From IMG/VR virus record IMGVR_UViG_3300046665_000548, positions 372,001 to 436,000 of that record: a stretch of DNA of 64,000 nt. One strand, given 5' to 3'. Shown piece by piece: positions 29,272 to 46,585 of the stretch. How positions within the stretch are numbered: position 1 is the stretch's first letter; the number at the start of each line of letters is the position of its first letter. The position numbers were made by a program, and so were the translations under genes. The notes under the pieces were generated by a model. It saw only the letters and a list, made by a program, of their open reading frames with translations, did not search any database and had not been told where the DNA came from.

Positions 29272-30095
29272 TTCTTCTCCAGTGCATCCTTCGCCATATC
29301 GAACACAAACTTGGCGTAAGCCGCATGTGCTCTTGGGCCAGGATGCATCATATCTCTCCCATAATCTCCCTGGGCAATGAATGACGGAAAGCGGTCAACG
29401 ACCATGTTATCAGTCCTAACGTAATCATAGAGAAACGGTTCTATCTCGTTAATGGGCTGAAAATCTCCCCAAATCCACGGGATGCCTGCTCCTCGGAGAA
29501 CCAATTCGATGAATTGCCAGTTCATCACCCAATTGTAGAAATCATTAGCATCTGTCTGAAGAGTAATGAGTGCCTTCTGCTCGTTGACAAAGAAATTAGT
29601 TCGAAGGACGTTGGGGATTAAAGCAATTCGATGATGGTAGTTGTTATAGTATTGGCGGCGCTGCATGCCTGGGAACAATACCACGACGAGTTCGGGTTTG
29701 ATAATATCAACGGTTTGATAGACAACCTGTGCCATTGCATCGCTACCATAGCCGGGCAAACCCAAATTGTGTTGTTCAAATTCTACGTTAAAGTGCTTAG
29801 ACAACATATCGGTCACGATAGACGTGTACACGGACTCGTACGGAACACCAATTCCGGTCGTGAACGAACACCCAACAAACATAAGTTTTGGTTTAGAAGA
29901 TTTCGGATCGAATTCCATGGATCGGTAGCCTCGGCTATTCACAGTATAGCCGAAATCGGTTGGCTTATATAAGTTGCCTTTGGCCTTATAGGTCTCTTTG
30001 GCGTCGCTCGGCCACCATGTAATTGTCCTGCCATAATCGCGAACGTTACCGGCCATCGCCTCTGGTATCTGGTCTTTAATCCAGAAGCGGGTCAT
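29253..30095 (-). CDS. SGNH/GDSL-like hydrolase or acyltransferase
   Basis: VGCSFTTG (block I), NLGLPGYG (block II), DMMHPG (block V). Confidence 0.7.
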   Translation of the reverse strand: MTRFWIKDQIPEAMAGNVRDYGRTITWWPSDAKETYKAKGNLYKPTDFGYTVNSRGYRSMEFDPKSSKPKLMFVGCSFTTGIGVPYESVYTSIVTDMLSKHFNVEFEQHNLGLPGYGSDAMAQVVYQTVDIIKPELVVVLFPGMQRRQYYNNYHHRIALIPNVLRTNFFVNEQKALITLQTDANDFYNWVMNWQFIELVLRGAGIPWIWGDFQPINEIEPFLYDYVRTDNMVVDRFPSFIAQGDYGRDMMHPGPRAHAAYAKFVFDMAKDALEKKWSSTA

Positions 30096-30145
30096 ATTCT
30101 TGTTTACCGCAAGGTGATGCATGAGACTTCCGGTTAAGGGCCTAC

Positions 30146-31378
30146 TTATTTATTGCTGTCCAGTATGGCCCAAAATTCAGGAAACACAGCGGCGTAACTT
30201 TCCTTTCGGTATTTGTCATGCCGATCTACGGTCTGGAGAAACGAGTCTAGGAGATTTTTTCCTGGGGCGCGCAGCAGGCTAATAATGCCGTCAAGCGGCT
30301 CGAACAAAATCGAACACTCGTCCACGCTCATTCCAGAAAGCTTTACGGCAATCGCTTCTTTGACTGGTTGTGGTAGGTTCATGGCGGTCATGTTGTCTGG
30401 ATTGTAGAGCATGTTTACCCAAACCCGCACGTTGAGATCACGAAAATACTGGACGTACTCAGGCAGGTAAAAAATGTTCAAGCTCGATACGGTGAGACAC
30501 ACATGGACATCCTTCGGCCCCATGGTTTCCAGGAAACGCTTCATGTTTTGCTCAACTAGCGGCCACTTAGCCGGATATCTCTGGTATTCGAACTGTTCTC
30601 CTGTGCCATCGATAGAGAGCATGATGTCTACGCGCTTGAAATGCGGGAATAGGTTTTCGATGGCGTCTTCCGGATAGATCGTTCCGTTCGTGTTGTAGTG
30701 AACGGTCTGGTTCTTCGACCATCCGTTATCAACCGCGTGTCGTAGAAGCTCAAAATGACGTTGAATGAGAAACGGCTCTCCGCCGTAAATCTCAAAGTGC
30801 TCAATATGCGGAAGCCATTCTTCAAGATCAGTCCAAAATCGCGGATTGTGCTCGTGCCAATTCATGAGCATCTTGCGTTCAAGCGGGAAACTAGCCGTGG
30901 ACAAGTTCTTCGCCGCATTGGTGATCACGTCGCTGCCATAGATGTCGATGGTCTCTTTGATCCATTTCGAGGAAGAGCCAACCGAACAGATACGGCACTT
31001 GAGGTTGCAGAGATTTCCAAGCTTCAGGTCCAGGAAGATCGGCTGAAGCTCGTCCTCTGGGACACTCAGTACGGCTTCCACTTTATTCCACCAACGCTTG
31101 TTCTCTCGAATGCGCTTGGATGTCTTACCAGCGGCTTCTTCGCGCCAGCATGACGAACATGCGGGGTGCTTAGTTCCTGCTACGAGCGCGCCTCGGAGAT
31201 CACGAACTGACTTGGACTTCCATACGTCCGTCATGCTGTCGCGTGCCAGAGTGAACTTGGTGCCGTCTTCCTTCTCGAAGAAATGCGTGCTCATACAGCA
31301 GGGAGCCACAAACCCGTCAGCGCGAGCTTCCAGATGGATGAAAGGCAGGATGCAAAAGGTATCGCTTATAGTAGACAT
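30146..31378 (-). CDS. Radical SAM enzyme 1 (class A, N-terminal twitch/SPASM-like domain)
   Basis: FCILPF..CC..CSSC; CNLKCRIC; GGEP. Confidence 0.92.
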   Translation of the reverse strand: MSTISDTFCILPFIHLEARADGFVAPCCMSTHFFEKEDGTKFTLARDSMTDVWKSKSVRDLRGALVAGTKHPACSSCWREEAAGKTSKRIRENKRWWNKVEAVLSVPEDELQPIFLDLKLGNLCNLKCRICSVGSSSKWIKETIDIYGSDVITNAAKNLSTASFPLERKMLMNWHEHNPRFWTDLEEWLPHIEHFEIYGGEPFLIQRHFELLRHAVDNGWSKNQTVHYNTNGTIYPEDAIENLFPHFKRVDIMLSIDGTGEQFEYQRYPAKWPLVEQNMKRFLETMGPKDVHVCLTVSSLNIFYLPEYVQYFRDLNVRVWVNMLYNPDNMTAMNLPQPVKEAIAVKLSGMSVDECSILFEPLDGIISLLRAPGKNLLDSFLQTVDRHDKYRKESYAAVFPEFWAILDSNK

Positions 31379-32571
31379 GCAAGCTCCGGGAAGGTCGTGG
31401 CAAAATCTTCTCCACGAAGATCGTCCATTTGCTTAAGTTTGTACCGAAGACGACCCAGCCATTGCGGCTCATGGGGCTGGCGAAGGCTAGTGATCGCGCC
31501 CTCCCAGCGACTGAGGGCCATTTGGTTTCCACCAACACTCTTCAGCCAATCCATGTGATCTTCGTATAGCTCGATAGCCTTTTCGCGAAGATTGTCGGGA
31601 GCCACGGATGGACGGAAATATTCAGGATATGTTAGAGGATTGATGTTCCATTCACTCGGCTCTACTAGTCCTTCCTCTACCCACGTGCGGTGGAAGGCTG
31701 GCATGTCGAGAAAATTCAGCACGCTCAAAGTAAAGTTAACGTAGAAATTAACGTTCGGGCATACGCGCATCATCTCTTTGCGATTGGCAACGATCTGATC
31801 CCACTTCATACCTTTGCGAATGTATTCGCCCTTTTCGCCCATGCCGTCCAGTGATGCCCCGACAACCACATACTTGAACTGATTCCAAAGTTCGAACACC
31901 TTGAGGTCTTTGAAGGCGGTCTGCGACATATTAGTATTGTAGCTGAGGTGCACGTCGAAGCGACCTTGCGCGGCGAGCATTTTTAAAATGCGGTAGTGCT
32001 CTTCCATCATCAATGGTTCGCCCCCCGCAAAGTAAATTTTCTCCACGGTCGGCAGAAAGCTTTCAATTTCTCCCCAAAGTTTTTCCGGATCATCCGGCCG
32101 CAGGATACGCTTGCTCGGCTTGCGACCTGACGCCTTTGCGTCATCGAACCAATTAGAGGAAAGCTCTGGTCCGCAGGTGCGGCATCGAAAATTACAGATA
32201 TTACTGAAACGGATATCCAAGTACGGCATGTTGATGCGATCAACGGTGCCATCCTCTTTCGTTTCGGAAACGATCTCCAGGTGATGCTTGAACGATTCGT
32301 TGTGGTCAATGCGCAGAGAACGGAAACCAGATTGCTCCATCTCGTAGCAGCGCGAGCATTCATCGGACGCCTTGTCCGCCAGCATGTTCAAACGAATCTG
32401 CTTCAGCTTCGGACTGTTCCAAACGTCTGCGAGCCCAGTTTCTTTGCCGATCTTTGCTATCGGCTTCTGTGAGTCCTGAACGCAACACAAATACGTGTTG
32501 CCGTTTGGCCAAGCATGCAGATGAGTCCATGGGACGAGACAGAAATGTTTGTTAGATAGTATATCAGTCAT
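31366..32571 (-). CDS. Radical SAM enzyme 2 (class A)
   Basis: FCLVPW..CC..CSRC; CNFRCRTC; GGEP. Confidence 0.92.
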   Translation of the reverse strand: MTDILSNKHFCLVPWTHLHAWPNGNTYLCCVQDSQKPIAKIGKETGLADVWNSPKLKQIRLNMLADKASDECSRCYEMEQSGFRSLRIDHNESFKHHLEIVSETKEDGTVDRINMPYLDIRFSNICNFRCRTCGPELSSNWFDDAKASGRKPSKRILRPDDPEKLWGEIESFLPTVEKIYFAGGEPLMMEEHYRILKMLAAQGRFDVHLSYNTNMSQTAFKDLKVFELWNQFKYVVVGASLDGMGEKGEYIRKGMKWDQIVANRKEMMRVCPNVNFYVNFTLSVLNFLDMPAFHRTWVEEGLVEPSEWNINPLTYPEYFRPSVAPDNLREKAIELYEDHMDWLKSVGGNQMALSRWEGAITSLRQPHEPQWLGRLRYKLKQMDDLRGEDFATTFPELACLL

Positions 32572-33781
32572 TTAGACCCTTCAGAAGAGCATACAATTCT
32601 GGGAAAACATCTTCTGATTTCTCGCTGCGATTGGCATCGAGAGCGCCGTTGTATGTGATGCCACGGCGTAGAAGGTCGGGATTACTGGGGTTATTTAGTA
32701 GCTGGCTTTTGATGCTATTGAAATCATAATCCGCCAGCACTGGCTCCATCTTGGCCAACGCAGCCATTTTGATGCGCTCGGGTAAAATCCATGGAGCCAA
32801 ATATTCTGGATCGTAGATATAGTTGAAATGCACGTGGAGGCCACGACCATGCTTCATATACTGGTAATACTCGGGGACTGTGAGTAGGTTTTGCCATCCA
32901 ATGGTCTGATTGACCGACGTGTTGATCCACGTTTCTTTCTGAAGTCGATCTAGGTTGCGTTCAACGTCCGCCCATTTCGTGCCATATCTGAGAAGCGCGT
33001 TTCGTTCTCCGAGATCGTCAATCGAGCAGGAGATACGAACTTCCTTGAACGAACGCCACACCTCGAAGGCGCTCTCCGGAAGGTTGGTCATGTTGATGTT
33101 GTACCAGAGCACGACATCCTTGGCCTTGCCGGAGGCGCGCAGCCGCTCCAGGAACTCCCAGTGTTTCTTGATCAGCGTCGGCTCGCCACCGTTGATGTAG
33201 ATCAGTTCCAGGTGGGTGGAGTTCTCAAACAGATCATCCCAGAACAGGTCTTTCTCCGGCCAATCGAAACCGGTCAAGCCTTGGTATGATCGAACGAAAT
33301 CAAACTTTTGTTCGAGTTGCGCGTACTCGACCACCCACTTAGACGAAGAGGCGGGATTGCAGGAGCGACATTTGACGTTGCAGATATTACCAAGTCGTAA
33401 TTCCACAAAACGCAGTTTGGGTGCAATCCGTCCGTCGTTGTCCGTCTCTAGCGCAGCAACCTCGCGAGTTAGGTCCGCAAAATTTTCATTCTCGGCAAGC
33501 CTTTTAGATTTCACGCCATTCTCTTCCTCACGGAAGCAACGCATGCAAGCGAGCGGCTTTCGGCCGTCAAGCATCTGCTTTCGAACCTGCCGAAAGTAGT
33601 CGCTATTCATGATCTCATCTGTAGAGTTTTGGTTCAGGTTTAACCACTCAGTGCTTCCATCTTCACGAAAATTGCGAGATCGGTTGACGCCTTTGTCGTG
33701 ATTGCTCACGCAGCACAACGTGACGCCGCCGTGGGGATGACTGGCTAGATGCAACCATGGGAGAACGCAAAACGTGCTCAT
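32564..33781 (-). CDS. Radical SAM enzyme 3 (class A)
   Basis: Start MSTFCVLPW at 33781 (ATGA overlap); CNVKCRSC; GGEP. Confidence 0.92.
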   Translation of the reverse strand: MSTFCVLPWLHLASHPHGGVTLCCVSNHDKGVNRSRNFREDGSTEWLNLNQNSTDEIMNSDYFRQVRKQMLDGRKPLACMRCFREEENGVKSKRLAENENFADLTREVAALETDNDGRIAPKLRFVELRLGNICNVKCRSCNPASSSKWVVEYAQLEQKFDFVRSYQGLTGFDWPEKDLFWDDLFENSTHLELIYINGGEPTLIKKHWEFLERLRASGKAKDVVLWYNINMTNLPESAFEVWRSFKEVRISCSIDDLGERNALLRYGTKWADVERNLDRLQKETWINTSVNQTIGWQNLLTVPEYYQYMKHGRGLHVHFNYIYDPEYLAPWILPERIKMAALAKMEPVLADYDFNSIKSQLLNNPSNPDLLRRGITYNGALDANRSEKSEDVFPELYALLKGLND

Positions 33782-34977
33782 ACCCAATGATCTTCTATTA
33801 GTTTGTACATCTCCGGAAATGTAGCCGCAAAATCCTCTTTGCGATACGCATCGCCCTCTTTGATCTCTTTTACGGCTCGCTTCATGAGATATTCGTCGTA
33901 CTCGGAATTCTCCATATGGTTCATCAGGGGCGTGACCGCAGCTAGCGTTTGCTCTCTCCAAACCTTTGACCGGAGATGATTACAGATCACATCCTTTGCT
34001 GCTCTCGGTAGAATACTCACTTGATACCACGGCGGAAAGTAAACAAGATTGTGCCATACGGTGTCTTCGATACCGAGTGTATCAAGATACTCATGCAGTT
34101 CGTGGATATAGTAAATGTTGTGCAGCGACACGGTATGCGTGATGCCGAAGTCGAACTTCATGCGGTCGTCTAATGAGTTTCGGAGGTTCGTAAAATACTC
34201 CAAATTGGATGCAGCAAGGGACCAGTTGCCTGGATGTCGAAGGTACTCAAACCGCTTGCCGACACCATCAACGCTTAGGCCAATCGCCATCCCTGCGAAA
34301 TTATCGATAATGCGCTCGATCAGCTTTTCGGGGCGTTGAGTGCAATTTGAAGACATCCGGATGCGAACGTTCTTCGCGTATCCCTTGTCGATGAACTCAT
34401 CTAGTACAGTGGCGAACTCCTTCATGAAGAAGGGCTCGCCTCCCATGAACTCCAAAGATCGTACATGCGGCATCCACTCGTCGCGGGTGTTCCAGAAGGC
34501 GCTATCATTCGAGATTATCTTCTGGCTACCGATTGGATCGAAACTGATATTGCGATCAATTGCTTCTTTAATCCACTTAGACGATGCGTGTGGATGGCAT
34601 GTTCGGCACTTTAGATTGCAAGTATTATTCAGTATTAGCTGCCAGTCATCCGGAAGCCCAGGCTCGGCGTCATAGTCGATTACTCGTCCATGATCGTCAG
34701 CCATTTTATTGTAGATCATGCGCTTGGAAGTTTTACCGTTTGCTTCATCCGACCAGCAAATGTTGCACGTCTGTGGCTTCTCACCGTCGCGAAACTGTTT
34801 TCGAAGCTTCTTCATGTATGGGCCATGAAAGATTTCGTTCACAGAACTGGTCTGGAGTTTCAACGGAACGCCGTCATCTCCGGTAATTTTCTCAGACGCG
34901 ATACAGCAAGCCCGCAATATGCCATTCGCTTCATTAGCCAAATGCGTCCAAGGCAGAGAACAATAAGTTTTAGTCAT
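33778..34977 (-). CDS. Radical SAM enzyme 4 (class A)
   Basis: MTKTYCSLPW (TGATG overlap); CNLKCRTC; GGEP. Confidence 0.92.
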   Translation of the reverse strand: MTKTYCSLPWTHLANEANGILRACCIASEKITGDDGVPLKLQTSSVNEIFHGPYMKKLRKQFRDGEKPQTCNICWSDEANGKTSKRMIYNKMADDHGRVIDYDAEPGLPDDWQLILNNTCNLKCRTCHPHASSKWIKEAIDRNISFDPIGSQKIISNDSAFWNTRDEWMPHVRSLEFMGGEPFFMKEFATVLDEFIDKGYAKNVRIRMSSNCTQRPEKLIERIIDNFAGMAIGLSVDGVGKRFEYLRHPGNWSLAASNLEYFTNLRNSLDDRMKFDFGITHTVSLHNIYYIHELHEYLDTLGIEDTVWHNLVYFPPWYQVSILPRAAKDVICNHLRSKVWREQTLAAVTPLMNHMENSEYDEYLMKRAVKEIKEGDAYRKEDFAATFPEMYKLIEDHWV

Positions 34978-36359
34978 CAGTTTTTCATCCACCAGCGGAG
35001 CACATCCGGATAGGGTTCAAATATTTGTTCGATTGTAATGCGACCGTTCTGGCCATCGCCGCGATGCCGGGCGAGACGTTGCAGAAACTCGCGCCCCTTG
35101 TAAAACGCTTCTTCGTATCGATCTGGGAACTGTTCTTCGAACGTTGGGCGAGTGCGCATGTCTTGTAGTGTCGTCACCAAGGTCTGAGTACGGTGGTTGA
35201 CCTTTGGCTCCATGTAACAGAGCAGATCATCAAGAACGTCATCCAGCACTTTACGTGGTAGCGCGAAAGGCGAAACTAGCTTCTCCGGATCGAACGCGTA
35301 AACGATCTTCGTCAAGATATCGACATCTAGTTCGTTGGCTAGATCGAAGAACTCTTTCATGTGGAGGAGGCCCGGAAGGGTCAGCGTCAGATCAAGCTTC
35401 ATGCGATCACGCAACTCTGGGACCTCAAGTCCGGCCTTAAAGTTGACGAGCCATTCGTCCCAGTTCAACCCAGTGCGGATGTACTCACCGACGCGGCCCG
35501 TCGCGTCAATCGAGCAGCACATTAGGTAATTCTTATAGTGCGGAAGGATGTCCTTAAACAGGTTCACGCCCTTCCAATCGATCCTGGACAGGTTCGTGTT
35601 GTAGCGCGCGTAGACGTTCTTGGAGTGGCCGCTTTCTACCATGTGGTGCATAAGCTCCCAGTGCTTTTCCCACATCAGCGGTTCGCCCCCGACCCAGTAA
35701 AGCTCTTCCACGATCCCCTGCTTGCACGCATCCGCGAGTTCCACCTCGACCGTTCCGGTCTGGAACTCTTCAATCTGAGCCTTCATCTCCGGCACCATCC
35801 AGGGGTCATAGATCGGAGACCACTCGTCATGCTTGCGCTTCTCGGCTTCCCAAGAAGACGATAGTTGATGACCGCACATACGGCACTTAAAGTTACAGAG
35901 ATTGTTGATCCGATAGTCGAAGCTGATGACCGGCAAGCTGAGATGTCCGGTGTCATCTGTGGCCGCAAACACCTCATCTACCTTTTCGTGAAACAGGTGA
36001 TTAAACCAGTTACGGTAGACATCAATGTTCAGTATTCGGTCGTTGCAGACCATACACTCAGGAATAACCTCGCCCGCCATATGAGCAAGTCGAACCTTCT
36101 TCAAGGCATCGCTATTCCAATGTTCTTCAAGCGTCTTCGGAGCATACCCGGTTGATGTGTTTTCGCCAGACCCGCTGTCGATATACTGTCGGATGTAGCT
36201 TGCTTCTTCTCTCGACGCACAGCAAAGCCGCCGTTCGCTCTGAGGCGAGATATAAGTGTGGGTAAACGGAGCCATGCAGAACGTTTTGTTCGGAGAATCC
36301 TCCTTGAAACGACCACTGGTTTCAAAGAGGGGTCGGACGCGCTTCGGCTGATGAATCAT
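34977..36359 (-). CDS. Radical SAM enzyme 5 (class A)
   Basis: FCMAPF..CC..CMVC; CNFKCRMC; GGEP. Confidence 0.92.
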   Translation of the reverse strand: MIHQPKRVRPLFETSGRFKEDSPNKTFCMAPFTHTYISPQSERRLCCASREEASYIRQYIDSGSGENTSTGYAPKTLEEHWNSDALKKVRLAHMAGEVIPECMVCNDRILNIDVYRNWFNHLFHEKVDEVFAATDDTGHLSLPVISFDYRINNLCNFKCRMCGHQLSSSWEAEKRKHDEWSPIYDPWMVPEMKAQIEEFQTGTVEVELADACKQGIVEELYWVGGEPLMWEKHWELMHHMVESGHSKNVYARYNTNLSRIDWKGVNLFKDILPHYKNYLMCCSIDATGRVGEYIRTGLNWDEWLVNFKAGLEVPELRDRMKLDLTLTLPGLLHMKEFFDLANELDVDILTKIVYAFDPEKLVSPFALPRKVLDDVLDDLLCYMEPKVNHRTQTLVTTLQDMRTRPTFEEQFPDRYEEAFYKGREFLQRLARHRGDGQNGRITIEQIFEPYPDVLRWWMKN

Positions 36360-36445
36360 GAACTAGAGTTTACGGAAATCCCTTGACGAAAACCATTTGT
36401 TTGGTAACGATCAGGTATAGCGAATCACCTACGAAAAGCGACGCA

Positions 36446-36700
36446 ATGCCCGGTGAACCCCACAATACTAATGCACCGGAACAAGATTGGCAGCGCCCAC
36501 GTAACTGTCATTGCCTAACCACACAGCAACGCGCTTGCTGTTACGAGCAATGCGACCCTGAAGACGTGGGTCGCATCATGCGGAAGGGCGAAGGATTGAT
36601 GGTCTTCGGATATTCGCTCGTGGCTGTAGTCGCCATCACTATCGTGATGTTCGCAGTTAAATGTACGTTTGGATCAGGGTGCTTTGGGCAGTATCAATAG
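36446..36700 (+). CDS. Small Cys-rich membrane protein on the opposite strand within the rSAM array
   Basis: CHC..CC..C followed by a TM helix; TTGACG-N13-TGGTA promoter-like site at 36383. Confidence 0.45.
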   Translation: MPGEPHNTNAPEQDWQRPRNCHCLTTQQRACCYEQCDPEDVGRIMRKGEGLMVFGYSLVAVVAITIVMFAVKCTFGSGCFGQYQ

Positions 36701-36783
36701 ATGAACGGATCGCGCTTGCGTAGTTTACGCAACTTGTTCTTCAATTTGATCCAGTCGATGAAGCGTTGAAAGAGTGTAATCAT
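36694..36783 (-). CDS. 29-aa basic peptide MITLFQRFIDWIKLKNKLRKLRKRDPFIY
   Basis: Manually translated ATG 36783 to TGA 36694; TAAATA at 36789-36794, 5 nt upstream. Below the ORF-track size cutoff. Confidence 0.7.
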   Translation of the reverse strand: MITLFQRFIDWIKLKNKLRKLRKRDPFIY

Positions 36784-36798
36784 ACGACTATTTAGGCG

Positions 36799-38199
36799 TT
36801 AGATTACAGACCCGCTGATCAATTCCTGGCGAAAACCTAGATTGGTCGTCGGGATAGTATTGAGCCAATCCCTCATGGAAGGGAACACGTCGATACTCTT
36901 ACCTCGTCGTACGTCATACTGTGCGTGGAAGCTCTTAAAATCCTGTTGGAGCTTGCCCATTTCGTCCGCACCTGGATGAGGTGTCTTAACCGCGTCGAGA
37001 TAGTCTGCCAGCCGCTGGATATTCTCGATCTCGAAAGACGATACGAGAGGATTGTCCTTAAGCTGGGCGCAGAGCGTCACTAAAGTGTCACGACGTTCCG
37101 CCAGTACGGCTGGCGGAAGGACGAGCGGGCTCATGAAACTCGGAAAACGCACGATATTGGCGCTCCACCGTACGCGTTCGCTGCCAAACTGCCGCTTCCA
37201 CTCAATCATAACGTCCAGGAACTCAGGCAAACTGAACAGGGAGAGATTGTTGATGGTCATCATCATGGTTAGCTGCTTCACGTTGCCATGGGTCATGACC
37301 TTTTCGACGTTGGCCTTCCAGGTGTCGAAAATCATCCCGTCTCGGATGTACTCTGCTTGAGCGCCCATGGCTTCGTTGGACGAGAAGATTTGCAGGTCCG
37401 GGACGGCATGCGATTTTTCAATCAGCCGGTCGATCAGTTCTGGCTTCCCGCCCAGGTTGGTATTGATCGCAAATTGAACCCCATTGGTGCCGTTTTCCTC
37501 AAAGAAATCGAACAGCTTCCAAACGTCCACCGACATCAAAGGCTCACCGCCAGTGATGCGAAGCTGCTTCAGTGTTTTGGATAGTTCTGGCCACCACTTC
37601 CAGAATGCAGCGATATACGGGTTTCCTTCATTGCGTTTTCCGTACGGCTCGGCCCATGCTCCGTTGTGCTGGAACGCACCAGCGCCGTCACTAACGAGGT
37701 TCTGGTACGCGCCATGCGTGTTGATATCCTTGGCCCATGTAGTGGAGAACCCAGCGTTACAATACGAACATGCGAAGTTGCAGGTACGATTGAATGCGAT
37801 CTCAAGCGTCTCCAGATGCACGTCCGCATCCCATGGCATTTTGGCGATTTGGTCGATTGATGTTTGATCGTATCGGGAAGATTTGAAAGCTCGATCAGAA
37901 ACGTTGTTCCGATTAATCCCCTCAATTCGCCAGCAGTAGTCGCACTCAGAAGGCTGATGCCCGTCGAGCATCAGCTTGCGCATCTTTTTCTTGTGCACGG
38001 TGTTGTGAAGCGCTGACGGATTGACGGCGATCTCGTCTAGCTGAATCTTGTGTGCAGGCGGTAGGTGGCATGACGCGGTTGCGCCATGGCCGAGCCAGAT
38101 GGTTGAGTCGAGCCATTTTGTTGCACAGAACGACGGCGATACCGGATCGAGCACGCGAGCCTGATAGTCCTGCCAGGATTCGTCAGCCTTCTTTGTCAT
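36799..38199 (-). CDS. Radical SAM enzyme 6 (class B, FCxxKW N-terminus)
   Basis: FCATKW..SCH..ECDYCW; CNFACSYC; GGEP. Confidence 0.92.
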   Translation of the reverse strand: MTKKADESWQDYQARVLDPVSPSFCATKWLDSTIWLGHGATASCHLPPAHKIQLDEIAVNPSALHNTVHKKKMRKLMLDGHQPSECDYCWRIEGINRNNVSDRAFKSSRYDQTSIDQIAKMPWDADVHLETLEIAFNRTCNFACSYCNAGFSTTWAKDINTHGAYQNLVSDGAGAFQHNGAWAEPYGKRNEGNPYIAAFWKWWPELSKTLKQLRITGGEPLMSVDVWKLFDFFEENGTNGVQFAINTNLGGKPELIDRLIEKSHAVPDLQIFSSNEAMGAQAEYIRDGMIFDTWKANVEKVMTHGNVKQLTMMMTINNLSLFSLPEFLDVMIEWKRQFGSERVRWSANIVRFPSFMSPLVLPPAVLAERRDTLVTLCAQLKDNPLVSSFEIENIQRLADYLDAVKTPHPGADEMGKLQQDFKSFHAQYDVRRGKSIDVFPSMRDWLNTIPTTNLGFRQELISGSVI

Positions 38200-38480
38200 T
38201 GCTGAGCACCATGCCATCTCAGCTTAAACAGTATCGCGTGCTTCGGATTGTCGAACATATACATCACGTTTTCCGGTAGTCCCCCGATATACCCCTCATT
38301 CCAATACGTCCAATTGTCAGTATACATTGAACCGACGTGATCCATACACCAAAAGAGCCGCGCTTCGGCGGTTGGGCCTGTCGGGAGAGTGATGATATGC
38401 GGAAACCGCATCATCTCTGCGCGAACCTCTTCCAGCCTCTTTTGGGCTTGTTCCTCTGGCGTAAGATCGTCAATCATCAT
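38196..38480 (-). CDS. Small motif-family protein coupled to rSAM6
   Basis: MFDNPKHAILFKLRW; ATGA overlap with the rSAM6 start. Confidence 0.65.
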   Translation of the reverse strand: MMIDDLTPEEQAQKRLEEVRAEMMRFPHIITLPTGPTAEARLFWCMDHVGSMYTDNWTYWNEGYIGGLPENVMYMFDNPKHAILFKLRWHGAQQ

Positions 38481-39915
38481 TACCCATGACTGAGTCGAAC
38501 CAACCGTCAATGTCCTCTTGGGGTTCGGCTTCCGCAGACTCGCCACGCAGCCACGAACCAAGCTCGGGTGGGAACGTCGCGTAGATGTCCTTTCCACGTC
38601 GCTTGTCATACTGCTCGTAGAAGTTCTTAAAATCTGCAACCAGCCGTTCCATCGGAGCCGGGTCGGCATGTGGCTCATCCGCGTTGCGCAGATAGTTGAT
38701 CAAGCGCTCGGTGTGTTCCTTCTCGTGGTCCTGAAACAGCGGTCGGTTTGTTTTGCTGCACAGTTCACCGGCCGCCAACGTCTTGCGCAGCCAAGCCTCA
38801 AGCTTGTCAGCGATGGATTGCCGGATAGCAAGCGGCAGCACGAGAGGGCTTTGGAACGTCGGCCAACGCAGGATATTCATGGTGATGGCTGGAAAGTTAT
38901 GGTGATAACTGCGCTTCATTTCCATCACGTCATCCAAGAACTCAGTGATCGAGAACAGGCACAGGCTATTGATCGTCATCATACAGTGCAGGCTCTTAAC
39001 GTTGCCATGCGTTGCGAGATGATGAATATTCGCCTTCCATTGCTTGTAGTCCATTCCGTCACGGATGTACTCGGCTTGTGCACCGAATGCTTCGCACGAC
39101 GTGTAGATGTCGAGGTTATCCACGGCATGGCTCTTCGTAACCAGTCGATCAATGAACTCTTGTTTCGCGCCCAAATTTGAATTGATCGCGAAATGCATTT
39201 TCGTGCCTGGGTTCTTCTCGAACCAGTCAAATAGCCGCCAAACATCGACGCTCATCAACGGCTCGCCGCCAGTGATGCGAATCTGCTGGAGCGTCTGAGT
39301 CAATTCAGGCCACCACTTCCAGAACGCCTCGATATACGGATTTGGCTGAGCGCGCCCGAAAGGCGCTGCGCTAGGATGGGTGTGCGTGTAGTGCTGGCGC
39401 TTATCGGATGATAGCCCGGTGTACGGCCCGTCCGTCTTGATGTCTTTCACCCACGTGGTGGAAAATGACGGATTGCAGTACGAACAAGCAAAGTTGCACG
39501 TCCTGTCGAAAGCAATTTCGAGGGTCTTTAGCGATGCATCATCATCTGGGTCAGCCGCTGCCATGGCTGCGATCTCTTTGTCTGTAGAGATAAGAGTCTT
39601 CCAAACACGGTCCGACACCACCTCAGGACCAAGGTCTTCAAACTTCCAGCAATATTCGCACTCGCTAGGACGCTCGCCTTCGAGCATCAGCTTACGCATC
39701 TTCTTCTTGTGCCGCGTGTTATGAATGGCACTTGGATTGTGCTGGATTTCTTCGACCTCGATCTGATGCGATGGCGGGTGATGACACGAAGCAGTTTGGC
39801 CACCGGCAAGCCAAATAGTGGCGTTGTTCCACTTAGCGGCGCAGAACGACTTAGATACGGGATCGATTACCCGAGCCTTGTAGTCGAGATAGCTTTCGAT
39901 GTTATTCTTAGGCAT
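38470..39915 (-). CDS. Radical SAM enzyme 7 (class B)
   Basis: FCAAKW..SCHHP..ECEYCW; CNFACSYC; GGEP. Confidence 0.92.
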   Translation of the reverse strand: MPKNNIESYLDYKARVIDPVSKSFCAAKWNNATIWLAGGQTASCHHPPSHQIEVEEIQHNPSAIHNTRHKKKMRKLMLEGERPSECEYCWKFEDLGPEVVSDRVWKTLISTDKEIAAMAAADPDDDASLKTLEIAFDRTCNFACSYCNPSFSTTWVKDIKTDGPYTGLSSDKRQHYTHTHPSAAPFGRAQPNPYIEAFWKWWPELTQTLQQIRITGGEPLMSVDVWRLFDWFEKNPGTKMHFAINSNLGAKQEFIDRLVTKSHAVDNLDIYTSCEAFGAQAEYIRDGMDYKQWKANIHHLATHGNVKSLHCMMTINSLCLFSITEFLDDVMEMKRSYHHNFPAITMNILRWPTFQSPLVLPLAIRQSIADKLEAWLRKTLAAGELCSKTNRPLFQDHEKEHTERLINYLRNADEPHADPAPMERLVADFKNFYEQYDKRRGKDIYATFPPELGSWLRGESAEAEPQEDIDGWFDSVMGNDD

Positions 39916-40127
39916 TAAATTTGGTCACTCCAGAACATCTTGTATAGCACGCGGTCTTTCGGATCGGCAAAATGAACGTAATAGTTCCCTACCCCATGTC
40001 CGAAACTAAACGCGCCGTTCGTCTGCTCAAATACCCATTCTGCCGCATCGAGAAAGTGCGTGTTCCATGTACCGTGCCGCCAAGGGTGAGGCATCAGTTC
40101 GCATTCGTACGAAAATATCTTCATCAT
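39915..40127 (-). CDS. Small motif-family protein coupled to rSAM7 (start uncertain)
   Basis: VHFADPKDRVLYKMFW; TAATG overlap with the rSAM7 start. Confidence 0.6.
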   Translation of the reverse strand: MMKIFSYECELMPHPWRHGTWNTHFLDAAEWVFEQTNGAFSFGHGVGNYYVHFADPKDRVLYKMFWSDQI

Positions 40128-40216
40128 TGTTCGGCAGTGACATTTTGCCGTAGCTGAAGTTATGCTCCGTACGATTTTCTCCATACATGGAGTGCACTTC
40201 ATGTCGAGAGGAAAAC

Positions 40217-41620
40217 CTATTGGGCTGCTGTTCGACATAGTTCCCAAAAGTCTTCCATCTCTGGGAAGCTCTCCAAGAATTTCGTACCTCGACGGCGATC
40301 ATGTTCAGTAAAGAAGCGAAAGAAATCGGCGCGATCACGCTTCAGCTTCTCTGGCGGAAGCTGATCACCTGCCCGCATCCATTCGAGATCGCGTTCAAGC
40401 TTGCTGATCTCGTAATCCTTCACACCTCGCAAGAACGTGTCGGACGTTTCGATCTTCGTTTTGAGGTATTCGATATCATCGGCCAGGATGTCTCGATAGC
40501 GCTGCGGAAGAATCTGGATTGACTGCCACGCAGGCGTACTCAACAGGGGAGGATCGAACCAGATCAATTGGCGATCATCATTGAACTCCTGCCGCATCTG
40601 AATGATCTGATCCAACAATGGTCGCAGCGAAGTGATCGACATAACGTTCATCGTGATGATGTACGAGATAGATCGACGCGCCGGTTTTTCGAGATACTTG
40701 CGTGAGTTCTCCAGCATGTAGTCGAAGTTCATGCCGTGACGAATGTACTCGGCCTTCTTGCCGTACGCGTCTACGCTCACGAACGTCATCAAATGCTCAA
40801 CTGCGCACTGATCCGTTATCGTGTTGGCCTGTTCGATAAACTTAGCGAACAGGCGAGGATCGGGACAAAAATTTGAGGTGAGACCAAGCTGAAGGTCCGG
40901 CTTTGGATTCTTGATGATGTAATCGAACACCTTGTAGGTGTTCTTGTCCATCAACGGCTCCCCTCCGGTCATGCGGAAATGCTTCAGGCCCTTGTACATT
41001 TCAGGCCACCATTTCCAGAAAGCGTCCACATAAGGATTGGCATCCTTGTGGGGGATCGGCATAAGCCCTTTCTGCCTTAAGTGCTCGATGCTATTGTGAG
41101 GCAAGGTGGTAGGGTACGGACCAAAGCGCTCAACCTCCTCGCGCCACGTGGTAGACAGATGGGGGCTGCAATAGCTGCATTTGAAATTGCAGGCAGAGTT
41201 GAAATTGACCTCGACATATCGCGGCGACACATCCCAATCCCAAGGATGCTCCATGATCTCATCGAACGTTTCCATGGCCCATTGTTCGCCAGACCGATAG
41301 TGGCGGTCGCTGAGATGGTCTCCAGGCTGATCTTCGATATTCCAGCAATACTGACACTCGGACGGCCGGTCGCCCTCCAGCATCATCTTGCGCATGCGCT
41401 TCTTATGCTGCGTGTTATGGAGCGCGGTCGGGTTAACGGCGAGTTCATCAAGCGGCACCTTGTGCACGCGAGGATGATAACAGCTTTGCGTCAGGCCCGC
41501 AGTGAGATTTATCGATACCTGATGCCACTTTGCGATGCACATACCCGGCCCGACTGAATCCAGCTTGGGCTTCACCTGTTCTGCGTTCGTCAGGTAGACG
41601 CTTTTGATCTTATCGTTCAT
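40217..41620 (-). CDS. Radical SAM enzyme 8 (class B)
   Basis: MCIAKW..SCYHP..ECQYCW; CNFKCSYC; GGEP. Confidence 0.92.
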   Translation of the reverse strand: MNDKIKSVYLTNAEQVKPKLDSVGPGMCIAKWHQVSINLTAGLTQSCYHPRVHKVPLDELAVNPTALHNTQHKKRMRKMMLEGDRPSECQYCWNIEDQPGDHLSDRHYRSGEQWAMETFDEIMEHPWDWDVSPRYVEVNFNSACNFKCSYCSPHLSTTWREEVERFGPYPTTLPHNSIEHLRQKGLMPIPHKDANPYVDAFWKWWPEMYKGLKHFRMTGGEPLMDKNTYKVFDYIIKNPKPDLQLGLTSNFCPDPRLFAKFIEQANTITDQCAVEHLMTFVSVDAYGKKAEYIRHGMNFDYMLENSRKYLEKPARRSISYIITMNVMSITSLRPLLDQIIQMRQEFNDDRQLIWFDPPLLSTPAWQSIQILPQRYRDILADDIEYLKTKIETSDTFLRGVKDYEISKLERDLEWMRAGDQLPPEKLKRDRADFFRFFTEHDRRRGTKFLESFPEMEDFWELCRTAAQ

Positions 41621-41808
41621 GCGAATCTCAGCTTAAAAATCACAGCGTCTCTTTCAGACGAAAACCAATACGTCCACGTGGCAGTGCCATCGTGATGATA
41701 GTGCGCGAAATCATAGGTGACGTTGTTTGATCGATAATCGCGAACCCACCCACTCATCCTATTGATTCGATCAAAAGTCACTTTATTGCGGAACGAAACC
41801 TTAATCAT
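41617..41808 (-). CDS. Small motif-family protein (63 aa) coupled to rSAM8
   Basis: Ends WFSSERDAVIFKLRFA; ATGA overlap. Confidence 0.75.
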   Translation of the reverse strand: MIKVSFRNKVTFDRINRMSGWVRDYRSNNVTYDFAHYHHDGTATWTYWFSSERDAVIFKLRFA

Positions 41809-41996
41809 GCGAATCTCAGCTTGAAGATAACGGCGTCGCGTTCGGAATGAAAATAATACGAGAAAGTGCGCGTACCGTCATCATTCAGGTTTCTAAAACG
41901 GGGTTCTACTTTATCTGTTCGGTAGAATTCTATCCAATTGAGCATCGTATAGATATCCAACCCTGTCATCTTTTTCCTGATCTTAACCTCAGTCAT
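41805..41996 (-). CDS. Small motif-family protein (63 aa), tandem paralog of 41617..41808
   Basis: Ends YFHSERDAVIFKLRFA; the last 18 nt are identical to those of the neighbour. Confidence 0.75.
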   Translation of the reverse strand: MTEVKIRKKMTGLDIYTMLNWIEFYRTDKVEPRFRNLNDDGTRTFSYYFHSERDAVIFKLRFA

Positions 41997-42912
41997 TTCG
42001 CAAGTGAAAGCTCTCACGGAAGAACTCCGACTCATCGGCGCTCAGGATCGGGAGGGCTATCTTTGTCTGTTTGGACACCTCTGCCCCGTACTGGGCCAAC
42101 AGTTCACCCATACGGCCCTGCGGAGGCCCCTGGCGGCTTCCTTCCTTAATGGCGGACTCGCCGCCCAGCATGTCCACAACGCCTCCCCAGAGGCTCTGGA
42201 ACCAGTCGTAATCACGGATCGGGGTGTAATCCCAGTCTAGGTCACACATGTGCGCCCAACCCATACGAGTTCCGAGCATGGCAAACATGCCATTATCGAA
42301 GTCTGCACCGACGCACGCCCAAATACGGACGTTGCGCAGGTTCACCGGGTGAAGCTGCTTCTTCATCCGCTCAGGATCGACGCGCCCTCCCCGATCTAGG
42401 GTCAGCTTGACCGCCTCGCGATAACCGACGCGGAAAGCCTGATAGGCAGAACCGTTGACCCAAACCTCGGAGAACGTCTTGTGGACCTGCTTGTAATCGT
42501 CTTCCCAACAGAAATCGACAGCCTTGCGGGGGTCATCGGCATTTTCGTGTGAATTCATGTTTAGCACGAAGTTTTTTGACCAAAGCTTTAGGCCGCCGTT
42601 GCCGTACATAAGACCATTGATCATGTTTACCCCATTCCAAGAGAAACACCTATTCGGGGTCGCTTTGGGATCGAACTCTACCATTTCATCGAAGAATTCG
42701 GGGCGGACAATATTGTCTGCGTCAACAGTTACGAACCAATCGGTCTCGGACTGCTCGGCACAGGCCCTATGGGCGGCATCAAAGCCTTTAACGCCATGCA
42801 CGCGCTTGGCCCAAGGAGCCTTTTCGCATAGATCGGCGTAATGCTTGTCCGCGTTGGGCTCATCGTAGCTTAAAAAGAAGCTGTCGAATTCAGATACATG
42901 AAAGGATGGCAT
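41989..42912 (-). CDS. GT-A fold glycosyltransferase-like protein (GT2-like)
   Basis: FLSYDEPNA..HGVKG..AH..WFVTVDADN (DxD motif). Confidence 0.7.
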   Translation of the reverse strand: MPSFHVSEFDSFFLSYDEPNADKHYADLCEKAPWAKRVHGVKGFDAAHRACAEQSETDWFVTVDADNIVRPEFFDEMVEFDPKATPNRCFSWNGVNMINGLMYGNGGLKLWSKNFVLNMNSHENADDPRKAVDFCWEDDYKQVHKTFSEVWVNGSAYQAFRVGYREAVKLTLDRGGRVDPERMKKQLHPVNLRNVRIWACVGADFDNGMFAMLGTRMGWAHMCDLDWDYTPIRDYDWFQSLWGGVVDMLGGESAIKEGSRQGPPQGRMGELLAQYGAEVSKQTKIALPILSADESEFFRESFHLRND

Positions 42913-46514: not shown

Positions 46515-46560
46515 AAAAAAACCTCCTCTAACGTATGGGTTAGCATACATCGAGGAGGTT
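46515..46560 (-). terminator. Terminator-like hairpin that also sequesters the SD of 46167..46514
   Basis: Minus strand AACCTCCTC..ATGTATG-CTAACC-CATACGT..GAGGAGGTT followed by a T-run and ATG. Confidence 0.7.
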
Positions 46561-46585
46561 CAAGAGTCGAAATATTTTGACCGTC

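What the first reader, a model, noticed from the sequence alone, without database searches (positions are those of the whole stretch)
30146..41620. Two rSAM subfamilies in separate sub-arrays, with an inverted (N-terminal) twitch domain
Seen: rSAM1-5 share FCx(L/V/A)P(W/F)xH..CC..CxxC at the N-terminus and are directly coupled to each other. rSAM6-8 share (F/M)CxxKW..SC(H/Y)xP..ECxYCW, and each is preceded by a small spacer gene. rSAM6 and 7 are close paralogs (RITGGEPLMSVDVW, CNFACSYC). Established: SPASM/twitch domains are normally C-terminal. Inference: tandem expansion followed by specialisation, with each enzyme acting on a different position or residue in an assembly line rather than being redundant.
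Basis: partly seen in the sequence, partly recalled or inferred. Interest (0 to 1): 0.6.

Follow-up and report, generated by a model that had tools for sequence, protein, structure and literature searches.

The report
Phage array of N-twitch radical SAMs
Eight different radical SAM enzymes of a curated but functionally uncharacterised family, whose extra iron-sulfur domain sits at the front of the protein, lie in a row inside a sugar-modification gene cassette of a 608-kb phage. The same cassette recurs in many environmental jumbo-phage contigs, so it is probably a conserved multi-step glycan-tailoring pathway of unknown chemistry.

Summary
Eight co-directional minus-strand genes (30146-41620) have an N-terminal four-Cys twitch motif, a CX3CX2C radical SAM motif and GGE.

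The N-terminal twitch is not new. All eight score 289-405 bits on NCBIfam NF033640 "N_Twi_rSAM" (cut-off 170).

What is new is the context. The array is the middle of a roughly 21.6-kb cassette (27455-49114):
- fibre-like structural genes
- three GT-A-like glycosyltransferase candidates
- the rSAM array
- an SGNH-like gene
- a carbamoyltransferase

It lies directly downstream of baseplate-wedge and giant-protein genes in a 607,744-bp Rak2/Atu_ph07-like phage. Parts of this cassette occur in 35-51 of 102 fetched loci, with 1-8 rSAMs per locus and recurrent orders.

R2, R3, R4, R5 and R8 each fall in a supported orthogroup shared with other phages. R1 was one clade only in the FastTree. Only R6/R7 is a lineage-specific duplicate. 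So the paralogy is ancient, not a local expansion.

In a close relative the rSAMs are 79-93% identical with dN/dS about 0.03-0.06. The small "spacer" genes evolve fast and belong to a genome-wide small-protein family.

Best reading, about 0.5: non-redundant radical enzymes tailoring sugars of a phage-made glycan. The substrate is unproven.

The parts
40217..41620 (-). R8, N_Twi radical SAM (467 aa), R8-type orthogroup; first rSAM of the array
   Evidence: NF033640 325.9 bits. In a clade with 66 other loci, support 91 and 94. 91% identical to the L103 orthologue, dN/dS 0.036.
38470..39915 (-). R7, N_Twi radical SAM (481 aa), R7-type orthogroup
   Evidence: NF033640 321.6 bits. AF2 model pLDDT 92.8. 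VIA Z 13.8 to BlsE over residues 127-416. 53.8% identical to Ralstonia phage RsoM2USA gp202.
36799..38217 (-). R6, N_Twi radical SAM (472 aa), lineage-specific duplicate of the R7 type
   Evidence: 55% identical to R7. Sister of R7 inside the R7 orthogroup, SH-aLRT 93. Also present in L103 at 88% identity.
36360..36798 (.). 439-bp gap between the two sub-arrays; no minus-strand gene
   Evidence: The close relative L103 has a 214-aa methyltransferase-like gene here. No promoter or terminator signal above chance.
34977..36359 (-). R5, N_Twi radical SAM (460 aa), R5 orthogroup
   Evidence: NF033640 296.3 bits. Clade with 44 loci, support 99 and 100. dN/dS 0.028.
33778..34992 (-). R4, N_Twi radical SAM (404 aa; GTG, or an ATG five codons in), R4 orthogroup
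   Evidence: NF033640 319.1 bits. Clade with 7 loci, support 100 and 99. Absent from the close relative L103.
32564..33781 (-). R3, N_Twi radical SAM (405 aa from the ATG)
   Evidence: NF033640 342.3 bits. The L103 orthologue is 405 aa and 90% identical. R3 orthogroup support 86 and 94.
31366..32571 (-). R2, N_Twi radical SAM (401 aa)
   Evidence: NF033640 404.9 bits, the best match to the family model. R2 orthogroup with 38 loci, support 97 and 99.
30146..31378 (-). R1, N_Twi radical SAM (410 aa)
   Evidence: NF033640 358.6 bits. R1 orthogroup with 28 loci, support 96 in FastTree; not strictly one clade in the IQ-TREE subset.
38196..38480 (-). Small spacer protein Sa (94 aa from the ATG that overlaps the R7 stop), C-terminal motif HAILFKLRW
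   Evidence: 58% identical to the L103 orthologue, dN/dS 0.23. No Pfam or NCBIfam hit.
39915..40247 (-). Small spacer protein Sb, same small-protein family
   Evidence: 56-57% identical to the L103 orthologue.
41617..42035 (-). Two small proteins, Sc (41617-41808) and Sd (41805-42035), same family, ending DAVIFKLRFA
   Evidence: L103 has only one gene here, 44-46% identical.
41989..42912 (-). GT2-like glycosyltransferase candidate (DxD motif VDADN)
   Evidence: Weak Pfam Glycos_transf_2 hit, E 0.0029, below the curated cut-off. Homologues directly upstream of the rSAM array in 51 of 102 loci.
42948..44408 (-). 486-aa protein of unknown function, not conserved in other cassettes
   Evidence: No Pfam, PHROG or NCBIfam hit. 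No homologue in the 102 loci.
44408..46167 (-). Two paralogous GT8-like nucleotide-diphospho-sugar transferases (44408-45379 and 45277-46167)
   Evidence: Atlas feature hits scoring 0.95-0.98 to nucleotide-diphospho-sugar transferase and GT8 clusters. They fall in one cluster, found in 46 loci.
46167..49114 (-). Four conserved cassette genes: w46167 (127 aa), w46586 (296 aa, S/T/G-rich), w47477 (316 aa, fibre-like N-terminus), w48512 (200 aa)
   Evidence: w47477 hits phrog_14394 'virion structural protein', E 6.8e-12; w48512 hits phrog_11259, E 2.4e-73. Syntenic in 9-44 loci.
29253..30122 (-). SGNH/GDSL-like protein (motif FVGCSFTTG), directly after R1
   Evidence: Weak NCBIfam hit NF047475, E 6.6e-4. 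Homologues in 14-16 loci.
27814..29271 (-). NodU/CmcH-type carbamoyltransferase, last enzyme gene of the cassette
   Evidence: Pfam Carbam_trans_N and Carbam_trans_C, E 6.5e-50 and 1.1e-53. phrog_1601, E 3.8e-103. Found in 40 of 102 loci.
27455..27802 (-). Fifth member of the small-protein family (Se), after the carbamoyltransferase
49287..63604 (-). Upstream context: baseplate wedge subunit (60299-63604) and a 3670-aa protein (49287-60299)
   Evidence: phrog_10646, E 0. Sub-threshold CBM_5_12 hit, 22.2 bits against a cut-off of 26.2. 36-42% identical to wedge proteins of Atu_ph07, Phosso and RaK2-like phages.

Best explanation
The eight genes are members of the curated family N_Twi_rSAM (NF033640). 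These are radical SAM enzymes whose auxiliary-cluster (twitch) domain precedes the catalytic barrel instead of following it.

They are not a recent local expansion. They are a set of anciently diverged orthogroups (R8, R7/R6, R5, R4, R3, R2, R1) that travel together in a conserved cassette of jumbo myoviruses.

In this 608-kb Rak2/Atu_ph07-like phage the cassette spans 27455-49114 on the minus strand and lies just downstream of the baseplate-wedge and giant-protein genes. In order it encodes small fibre-like structural proteins, three GT-A-like glycosyltransferase candidates, the rSAM array, an SGNH-like gene and an O-carbamoyltransferase.

Proposed mechanism (inferred, not shown):
1. Each rSAM uses its CX3CX2C [4Fe-4S] cluster and SAM to make a 5'-deoxyadenosyl radical, which abstracts a hydrogen from a sugar carbon.
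2. The fully Cys-ligated N-terminal twitch cluster handles the second electron, as in BtrN.
3. Each orthogroup therefore performs one distinct oxidation, epimerisation, dehydration or decarboxylation-type step on a different sugar or position, either on an NDP-sugar or on the growing glycan.
4. The glycosyltransferases assemble the glycan, and the carbamoyltransferase and SGNH-like enzyme finish it.
5. The most likely acceptor is a virion fibre or baseplate protein made from the same late gene block.

The small spacer genes are unrelated inserts from a genome-wide small-protein family.
For: Family membership:
- All eight score 289-405 bits on NF033640, cut-off 170.
- Invariant in 115 members: four twitch Cys, CX3CX2C, GGE and Arg74/Arg285. 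Across the six large orthogroups Arg103 and Arg440 are also conserved at 90% or more.
- The N-terminal region is homologous to the C-terminal twitch of BtrN.
- The AF2 model has pLDDT 92.8. Its core superposes best on BlsE, a sugar-nucleoside decarboxylase with a twitch domain: Z 13.8, rmsd 3.2 over 219 residues.

Ancient orthogroups and conserved order:
-. Recurrent orders are R8-R7-R2-R1-R5 and R8-R7-R5-R3(-R4-R2).
- The same orthogroup is almost never present twice in one array.

Selection:
- Against the relative L103 the rSAMs are 79-93% identical, with dN/dS 0.03-0.06 where computable. The GT2-like gene, the carbamoyltransferase and the baseplate hub give 0.025-0.058.
- Orthogroup-specific conservation.

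Link to glycan genes, seen in several independent contexts:
- Type A, as in this window: GT8-like x2, GT2-like, rSAMs, SGNH-like, carbamoyltransferase.
- Type B: methyltransferase, GT2_4, GT7-LamG x2, R8, R7, R2, SGNH, tail sheath.
- Type C: R8, carbamoyltransferase, three NAD-dependent sugar epimerases/dehydratases; also DegT sugar aminotransferases.
- A Bacteroidota contig with four family-like copies next to a GDSL lipase, a GT2-methyltransferase fusion and a GT22-like transferase.

Structural-module location.
Against: - No member of NF033640 has a known substrate, and I found no paper on the family.
- Most characterised SPASM/twitch enzymes modify peptides or proteins. SkfB, anSME and CteB score nearly as well as BlsE in structure comparison: Z 11.8-13.6 against 13.8.
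- One bacterial context has no sugar genes. It has two copies beside five PhyH dioxygenases, a WelO5-like halogenase and a methyltransferase.
- The GT2-like and SGNH-like assignments in the window rest on weak hits.
- Synteny with fibre genes may reflect shared ancestry of these phages rather than function.
- The acceptor (virion protein, host envelope, DNA or a free metabolite) is not addressed by any result.
- dS is saturated (above 1.3), so the dN/dS values are approximate.
Confidence: 0.5

Rival explanations
1. The rSAMs are protein or peptide maturases, like anSME, sactipeptide/ranthipeptide synthases, epimerases or QhpD. They act directly on the fibre-like structural proteins encoded upstream (w46586, w47477, w48512 or the giant protein), each enzyme installing a crosslink or epimerisation at a different site. 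The glycosyltransferases act independently.
For: - Most characterised SPASM/twitch enzymes act on peptides or proteins (established knowledge).
- Structural and profile hits to SkfB, CteB, anSME, SuiB, EpeE and TigE.
- The array is conserved next to fibre-like genes in 35-44 loci.
- Weak lead: the Atlas model of w46586 partly resembles (TM 0.32/0.45) a mostly viral cluster in which 25% of members carry Pfam PF27846 'tSAM_targ_Cxxx_rpt'.
Against: - No RRE or other peptide-binding domain was detected.
- No Cys-repeat protein exists in the genome or in 1.9 Mb of related loci, and the fibre-like proteins have only 1-2 Cys.
- Cassette types B and C lack the fibre-like genes but keep sugar enzymes.
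- TM below 0.5 usually means a different fold.
Confidence: 0.2
2. The cassette makes or remodels a glycan or a nucleotide-linked small molecule that is not attached to the virion. Candidate destinations are host envelope polysaccharide (superinfection exclusion or receptor masking), phage DNA hypermodification, or a diffusible metabolite.
For: - The same sugar-enzyme associations as in the best explanation.
- Conserved arginines would suit a phosphate-bearing substrate such as an NDP-sugar or nucleotide; this is inference.
- Weak profile similarity to viperin and MoaA, which act on nucleotides.
- PHROGs files the carbamoyltransferase under 'moron, auxiliary metabolic gene and host takeover'.
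Against: - The cassette sits co-directionally inside the baseplate/fibre block here, and next to tail sheath or fibre-like genes in other loci.
- No DNA-modification genes (for example hydroxymethylases) were seen in the cassette.
- No transporter or flippase gene was seen in the window cassette.
Confidence: 0.15
3. The small spacer genes are RiPP-type precursor peptides, and R6-R8 are their dedicated maturases.
For: A small ORF directly precedes each of R6, R7 and R8, with translational overlap. The small proteins share a conserved C-terminal motif.
Against: - An HMM of the five spacers hits about 23 further small ORFs at E below 0.01, spread over the whole 608-kb genome and far from any rSAM.
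- The family is absent from 102 related loci except two ORFs in one locus, although R8 and R7 orthologues are there.
- The spacers evolve fast: 46-58% identity against 88-91% for the neighbouring enzymes.
- A fifth copy follows the carbamoyltransferase, not an rSAM.
Confidence: 0.03
4. The paralogs are functionally redundant products of tandem amplification, for gene dosage, or are decaying copies.
For: Tandem, co-directional arrangement. R6 and R7 are 55% identical and sister to each other.
Against: - Paralogs are only about 17-35% identical, apart from R6-R8 at 34-55%.
- Each has closer orthologues in other phages.
- All catalytic and cluster motifs are intact.
- dN/dS is about 0.03-0.06.
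- There are orthogroup-specific conserved positions.
Confidence: 0.03

Closest known systems
NCBIfam NF033640 'N_Twi_rSAM' (twitch domain-containing radical SAM protein)
   Same: All eight proteins match full length (model positions 1-398), well above the curated cut-off. They have the N-terminal twitch, CX3CX2C and GGE.
   Different: The family has a name but no assigned function, and I found no publication on it. The window adds a strongly supported, mostly viral sub-clade (R7/R8 types: one Cys instead of CC, no Pfam SPASM hit, about 60-80 residues longer). It also adds the multi-orthogroup array context.
BtrN (2-deoxy-scyllo-inosamine dehydrogenase; the founding twitch-domain rSAM)
   Same: The twitch motif is homologous: family profile positions 33-102 align to BtrN residues about 164-258, including the CxxC. 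BtrN has a sugar-like substrate, and its auxiliary [4Fe-4S] cluster is fully Cys-ligated (established knowledge).
   Different: In BtrN the twitch domain is C-terminal, here it is N-terminal. The enzymes here are about 150-200 residues longer, with a helical C-terminal extension. The similarity is only at profile level (E 1e-6 to 4e-6).
BlsE (cytosylglucuronate decarboxylase, twitch rSAM acting on a sugar nucleoside)
   Same: Best structural match of the R7 model core (Z 13.8, rmsd 3.2, 219 residues). Also a profile hit (E 2.6e-6; 1.7e-5) and a weak TIGR04466 hit for R6.
   Different: 16% identity. Only the barrel aligns. The lead over peptide maturases such as SkfB (Z 13.6) is within noise.
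SPASM/twitch peptide and protein maturases (anSME, SkfB, CteB, SuiB, EpeE, TigE)
   Same: Same superfamily core and auxiliary-cluster logic. Foldseek, VIA and profile hits.
   Different: Their SPASM/twitch domain is C-terminal. Many have an RRE or a cognate precursor peptide next door. No such element was found here.
Virus-encoded glycosylation systems (mycobacteriophage virion O-glycosylation; chlorovirus and mimivirus glycan machineries). From general knowledge, not tested here.
   Same: Virus-encoded glycosyltransferases and sugar-tailoring genes placed near structural genes.
   Different: To my knowledge none of these includes arrays of radical SAM enzymes. Virion glycosylation is not shown for this phage.

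Membership tests
NCBIfam NF033640 N_Twi_rSAM | Full-length HMM score above the curated cut-off (170 bits) | tested here: met
   288.8-404.9 bits for all eight, model coverage about 1-397 of 398. A ninth copy elsewhere in the genome scores 249.9 bits.
NCBIfam NF033640 N_Twi_rSAM | Twitch (half-SPASM) domain located N-terminal to the radical SAM core | tested here: met
   Pfam SPASM at residues about 5-106 of R1-R5, ahead of Radical_SAM at about 120-290. Profile alignment to the C-terminal twitch of BtrN. Motif C-x13-G-x4-C...CxxC in all eight.
Radical SAM superfamily | CX3CX2C cluster motif, GGE SAM-binding motif, partial TIM-barrel fold | tested here: met
   C140/C144/C147 and G216-G217-E218 (R7 numbering) are invariant in 115 sequences. 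AF2 model pLDDT 92.8, Z 11-14 to many solved rSAM cores.
Radical SAM superfamily | Reductive cleavage of SAM to a 5'-deoxyadenosyl radical | not testable with these tools
   Needs anaerobic biochemistry.
SPASM/twitch auxiliary-cluster domain | Cys ligands that bind an auxiliary [4Fe-4S] cluster | tested here: inconclusive
   Four Cys (C25, C44, C86, C89 in R7) are invariant across 115 members and conserved in six orthogroups. They align with the BtrN twitch motif. Cluster binding itself needs Fe/S analysis and EPR. I could not read model coordinates to measure Cys-Cys distances.
SPASM/twitch auxiliary-cluster domain | Usual position C-terminal to the barrel | tested here: not met
   The domain is N-terminal in all eight. 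This is the feature that defines NF033640.
RiPP-type rSAM maturase system | Cognate precursor peptide gene co-conserved with the enzyme, and/or an RRE peptide-binding domain | tested here: not met
   No RRE or peptide-maturase family reaches its cut-off. The adjacent small ORFs belong to a dispersed family not found in orthologous cassettes. No Cys-repeat proteins.
Carbohydrate-acting twitch rSAMs (BtrN/BlsE type) | Specific sequence or structure relationship and a sugar substrate | tested here: inconclusive
   BlsE and BtrN are among the best PDB hits, but the margins over peptide maturases are small. The genomic association with sugar enzymes is strong. The substrate is untested.

The most novel reading that the evidence does not exclude
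The N_Twi rSAM orthogroups carry out a series of new radical carbohydrate transformations, and jumbo phages use them to build a heavily tailored, carbamoylated glycan on their own tail-fibre or baseplate proteins. That would be a virus-encoded, multi-rSAM glycan pathway with no described counterpart. It would also give the first function to a family with thousands of mostly environmental and viral members.
Probability: 0.3. Interest if true: 0.75.

Novelty: new variant of a known kind. Interest (0 to 1): 0.55.

Why it matters
- NF033640 is a named but functionally uncharacterised radical SAM family. A word search found 3709 relatives at E 1e-10 or better, and the nearest Atlas clusters are almost entirely viral.
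- Up to eight distinct, anciently diverged and strongly constrained orthogroups ride together with glycosyltransferases, sugar-nucleotide enzymes and a carbamoyltransferase in jumbo-phage structural regions. That gives enzymologists a concrete substrate class to test.
- It gives phage biologists a candidate system for virion or surface glycan decoration.
- A cultured phage, Ralstonia phage RsoM2USA, carries a minimal version with one R7-type rSAM and a carbamoyltransferase. This makes the question testable at the bench.

Tried and rejected
Searches that gave nothing:
- Megablast of the array against cultured phages: no match.
- Literature searches found nothing on the family or on such arrays. 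Terms tried: N-terminal twitch/SPASM, NF033640, radical SAM with jumbo phage, carbamoyltransferase with glycosyltransferase, Cxxx repeat, tSAM. The RsoM2USA paper does not mention the gene.
- Foldseek against the PDB gave only generic rSAM cores, TM about 0.3.
- The sigma-70 promoter and terminator scan of 27000-46900 was at or below chance, so operon boundaries stay unknown.

Ideas rejected:
- Spacer genes as RiPP precursors.
- A Cys-repeat target protein, prompted by the Atlas row naming PF27846 'tSAM_targ_Cxxx_rpt'. The Pfam model is not in the library. No (Cxxx)n protein occurs in the cassette or in 102 loci, and the single genome hit is in an Arg/Pro-rich, probably non-coding frame.
- The ninth copy, R9, has no sugar genes nearby.

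Not used: the large representative-protein search, the reads tools and the complex predictor. No claim here rests on absence of relatives, on expression, or on binding.

Full report
WHAT IS THERE

The window is bases 372001-436000 of a 607,744-bp IMG/VR virus record. Between 30146 and 41620 the minus strand carries eight long ORFs:
- R1 30146-31378
- R2 31366-32571
- R3 32564-33781 (ATG start; the ORF extends to 33961, but the 90%-identical orthologue in a close relative is 405 aa)
- R4 33778-34992
- R5 34977-36359
- R6 36799-38217
- R7 38470-39915
- R8 40217-41620

R1-R5 overlap one another by 4-16 nt. R6, R7 and R8 are each preceded by a small ORF. R1-R5 are 21-35% identical to each other, R6-R8 are 34-55%, and the two sets are about 17-24% identical to each other.

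THE N-TERMINAL TWITCH IS REAL BUT ALREADY CURATED

All eight proteins match NCBIfam NF033640, 'N_Twi_rSAM, twitch domain-containing radical SAM protein', over its full length at 289-405 bits against a cut-off of 170.

- Pfam places SPASM at residues about 5-106 of R1-R5, ahead of Radical_SAM. R6-R8 lack the Pfam SPASM hit but keep the motif C-x13-G-x4-C...C-x2-C.
- A profile of 115 family members aligns its positions 33-102 to the C-terminal twitch region of BtrN, residues about 164-258, including the CxxC.
- In that alignment the four twitch Cys, the CX3CX2C triad, GGE and two Arg are invariant. Two further Arg are conserved across the six large orthogroups.
- An AlphaFold2 model of R7 is confident (pLDDT 92.8, pTM 0.89). 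Its barrel, residues about 105-420, superposes on many solved rSAM enzymes. The best are BlsE (Z 13.8), SkfB (13.6), MoaA (12.6) and anSME (12.5). The N-terminal 100 residues stay outside these alignments, as expected for a permuted arrangement.
- I found no paper on this architecture or family.

The architecture is therefore known at the level of database curation, and its function is unknown.

THE PARALOGS ARE ANCIENT ORTHOGROUPS, NOT A LOCAL EXPANSION

- Searching IMG/VR with R7 found 208 related stretches, and R2 found 21 more loci.
- The 102 fetched loci hold 1-8 family members each, most often 3-6, nearly all co-directional and adjacent.
- Most window paralogs have cross-phage relatives at about 35-55% identity. 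That is closer than their own neighbours in the array.
- In a FastTree of 296 sequences, R1, R2, R3, R4, R5 and R8 each sit in their own clade with members from 7-66 other loci (support 86-100). R6 and R7 share one clade. The R6-R8 group is a clade with support 98.
- An IQ-TREE (LG+C20 PMSF) run on 65 sequences confirms R2 (99), R4 (99), R5 (100), R7-type (95), R8 (94) and R3 (94). The R7+R8 group gets 100 on a long stem. It places window R6 and R7 as sisters (93) inside the R7 type.
- R1 needs two changes on that tree, and the 'R1-R5 subfamily' is not supported as a clade (35).
- Among 67 non-redundant arrays that lie away from contig ends, the commonest orders are R8-R7-R2-R1-R5 and R8-R7-R5-R3(-R4-R2). 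An orthogroup is almost never present twice in one array. The window array is close to the union of these orders plus one extra R7-type copy.

SELECTION

A close relative (L103, a 73.8-kb Logan contig) has the same array without R4.

| Gene or set | Amino-acid identity to L103 | dN/dS |
|---|---|---|
| Seven shared rSAMs | 79-93% | 0.028-0.056 (six of seven; R2 not computable) |
| Carbamoyltransferase | 87% | 0.058 |
| GT2-like gene | 93% | 0.027 |
| Baseplate hub | 89% | 0.025 |
| Small spacer genes | 46-58% | 0.23-0.31 (Sa, Sc; Sb not computable) |

dS is saturated (above 1.3), so the ratios are approximate. Each large orthogroup keeps 50-132 columns at 90% or more conservation, and only 18 are shared by all six.

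THE SPACER GENES

Five small ORFs share a C-terminal motif of the type DAxxFKLRF: 38196-38480, 39915-40247, 41617-41808, 41805-42035 and 27455-27802.

- An HMM built from them finds about 23 further small ORFs at E below 0.01, scattered over the whole genome, always matching at the C-terminus.
- The HMM finds only two ORFs, in one locus, in 1.9 Mb of related loci.
- They are therefore a genome-wide, fast-evolving small-protein family that has been inserted into this cassette. They are not cognate partners of the enzymes.

CONTEXT

The array is the middle of a larger conserved cassette. Homologues of its parts occur in the same order in many loci:

| Window gene | Loci with a homologue (of 102) |
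|---|---|
| w48512 | 9 |
| w47477 | 35 |
| w46586 | 40 |
| w46167 | 44 |
| Two GT8-like genes | 46 |
| GT2-like gene | 51 |
| SGNH-like gene | 14-16 |
| Carbamoyltransferase | 40 |

- The GT8-like assignment rests on Atlas feature hits scoring 0.95-0.98 and a DxD motif.
- The GT2-like and SGNH-like assignments rest on weak hits.
- The carbamoyltransferase assignment is solid.
- w47477 has a virion-structural N-terminus.
- Directly upstream lie a 3670-aa protein and a baseplate wedge subunit (phrog_10646, E 0). The wedge protein is 36-42% identical to those of Atu_ph07, Phosso and RaK2-like jumbo phages. A baseplate hub and an S8+M23 protein lie on the other side.

Other cassette types lack the fibre-like genes but still pair the rSAMs with sugar enzymes:
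- GT7-LamG, GT2_4 and methyltransferases next to the tail sheath.
- R8, a carbamoyltransferase and three NAD-dependent epimerases/dehydratases.
- DegT aminotransferases.

Bacterial contexts:
- In a sample of 401 Bacteroidota genomes, 4 exceeded the family cut-off.
- One has four family-like copies beside a GDSL lipase, a GT2-methyltransferase fusion and a GT22-like transferase.
- Another has two copies beside five PhyH dioxygenases, a WelO5-like halogenase and a methyltransferase.
- A contig binned in a Bacteriovoracaceae MAG carries eight copies above the family cut-off.

The cultured Ralstonia phage RsoM2USA has one R7-type gene (53.8% identity) and a carbamoyltransferase nearby, both annotated as hypothetical.

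INTERPRETATION

Shown:
- Family membership and intact motifs.
- Ancient orthogroups in conserved order.
- Purifying selection.
- Repeated association with carbohydrate enzymes.
- Location in the tail/baseplate gene block.

Inferred:
- Each orthogroup performs a different radical step on a sugar.
- The product is a glycan on a virion protein.

I give this reading about 0.5.

The main rival, at about 0.2, is direct modification of the fibre-like proteins. It is favoured by the peptide bias of characterised SPASM/twitch enzymes, and by a weak Atlas lead to a Pfam family named 'tSAM_targ_Cxxx_rpt'. It is weakened by the absence of any Cys-repeat protein or RRE and by cassettes that lack fibre genes.

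A non-virion destination for the product (host envelope, DNA or a free metabolite) stays open at about 0.15.

Redundant copies, and RiPP precursors among the spacers, are each about 0.03.

LIMITS
- No tool here can show cluster binding, substrate or expression.
- I could not read the model coordinates.
- The promoter and terminator scan was uninformative.
- The FastTree and quick-IQ-TREE supports carry the caveats printed by the tool, including long branches in the heterogeneous 'R9' set.
- The reads tools, the complex predictor and the large representative search were not needed.

Noticed in passing
window 27455-27802, 38196-38480, 39915-40247, 41617-42035; genome-wide, for example G000 82075-82326, 291863-292309, 337415-337978: A family of small proteins (about 60-150 aa) ends in a motif of the type (F/Y)xFxxxxDAxx(F/Y)KLR(F/W). 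There are five copies in the cassette and about 23 more at E below 0.01 across the 608-kb genome. They evolve fast, have no Pfam or NCBIfam hit, and are almost absent from related phage loci.
   Followed up: partly
G000:C1:135483-136637 (+), outside the window: A ninth, solitary N_Twi_rSAM gene (249.9 bits), very divergent, sits among small unknown ORFs with no sugar genes nearby. Two further radical-SAM-like frames that do not reach the family cut-off lie at 582581-583096 and 189416-189802.
   Followed up: partly
window 36360-36798 versus L103:6705-7349: The closest relative has a 214-aa class-I methyltransferase-like gene between R6 and R5 and lacks R4. The window has R4 and only a 439-bp gap there, containing an opposite-strand ORF at 36383-36700. 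Genes are gained and lost modularly within the array.
   Followed up: partly
window 24594-27149 (+): An 851-aa protein fuses a subtilase (S8), Ig-like He_PIG repeats and an M23 peptidase, next to the baseplate hub (23500-24579). The close relative L103 has only a 167-aa M23 protein at this position.
   Followed up: no
window 49287-60299 (-): A 3670-aa protein directly downstream of the baseplate wedge gene. It has only a sub-threshold CBM_5_12 hit (residues 1357-1391) and no other family match. It is presumably a giant fibre or baseplate component.
   Followed up: no
L104 (DIVA01000093.1, Bacteriovoracaceae MAG UBA6144, 83.9-kb contig): The contig has eight N_Twi_rSAM genes above the family cut-off, seven of them in a row plus one inverted, up to 56% identical to window orthologues. 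It is either a phage contig binned with a bacterium or a hint to the host range of such phages.
   Followed up: partly
L117 (G081:C2:1208000-1227999, Bacteroidota chromosome): Two N_Twi-type rSAM genes sit beside five PhyH-family dioxygenases, a WelO5-like halogenase, a methyltransferase and a reductive-dehalogenase-like protein. This is a tailoring cluster with no sugar genes in the ten neighbours scanned.
   Followed up: partly
window 46586-47476 (-): The Atlas model of this S/T/G-rich cassette protein weakly resembles (TM 0.32/0.45) a mostly viral cluster in which 25% of members carry Pfam PF27846 'tSAM_targ_Cxxx_rpt'. That Pfam model is not in the local library, and no Cxxx repeats were found here.
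   Followed up: partly
window 13974-18189 (-): SbcC-like (13974-16067) and SbcD-like (17122-18189) nuclease subunits lie upstream of the structural block.
   Followed up: no
L001 (Ralstonia phage RsoM2USA, MG752970, record 126846-128228 and nearby): A cultured 344-kb phage carries an R7-type N_Twi rSAM (gp202) and, three genes downstream, a carbamoyltransferase homologue. All are annotated as hypothetical. This gives an experimentally tractable minimal cassette.
   Followed up: partly
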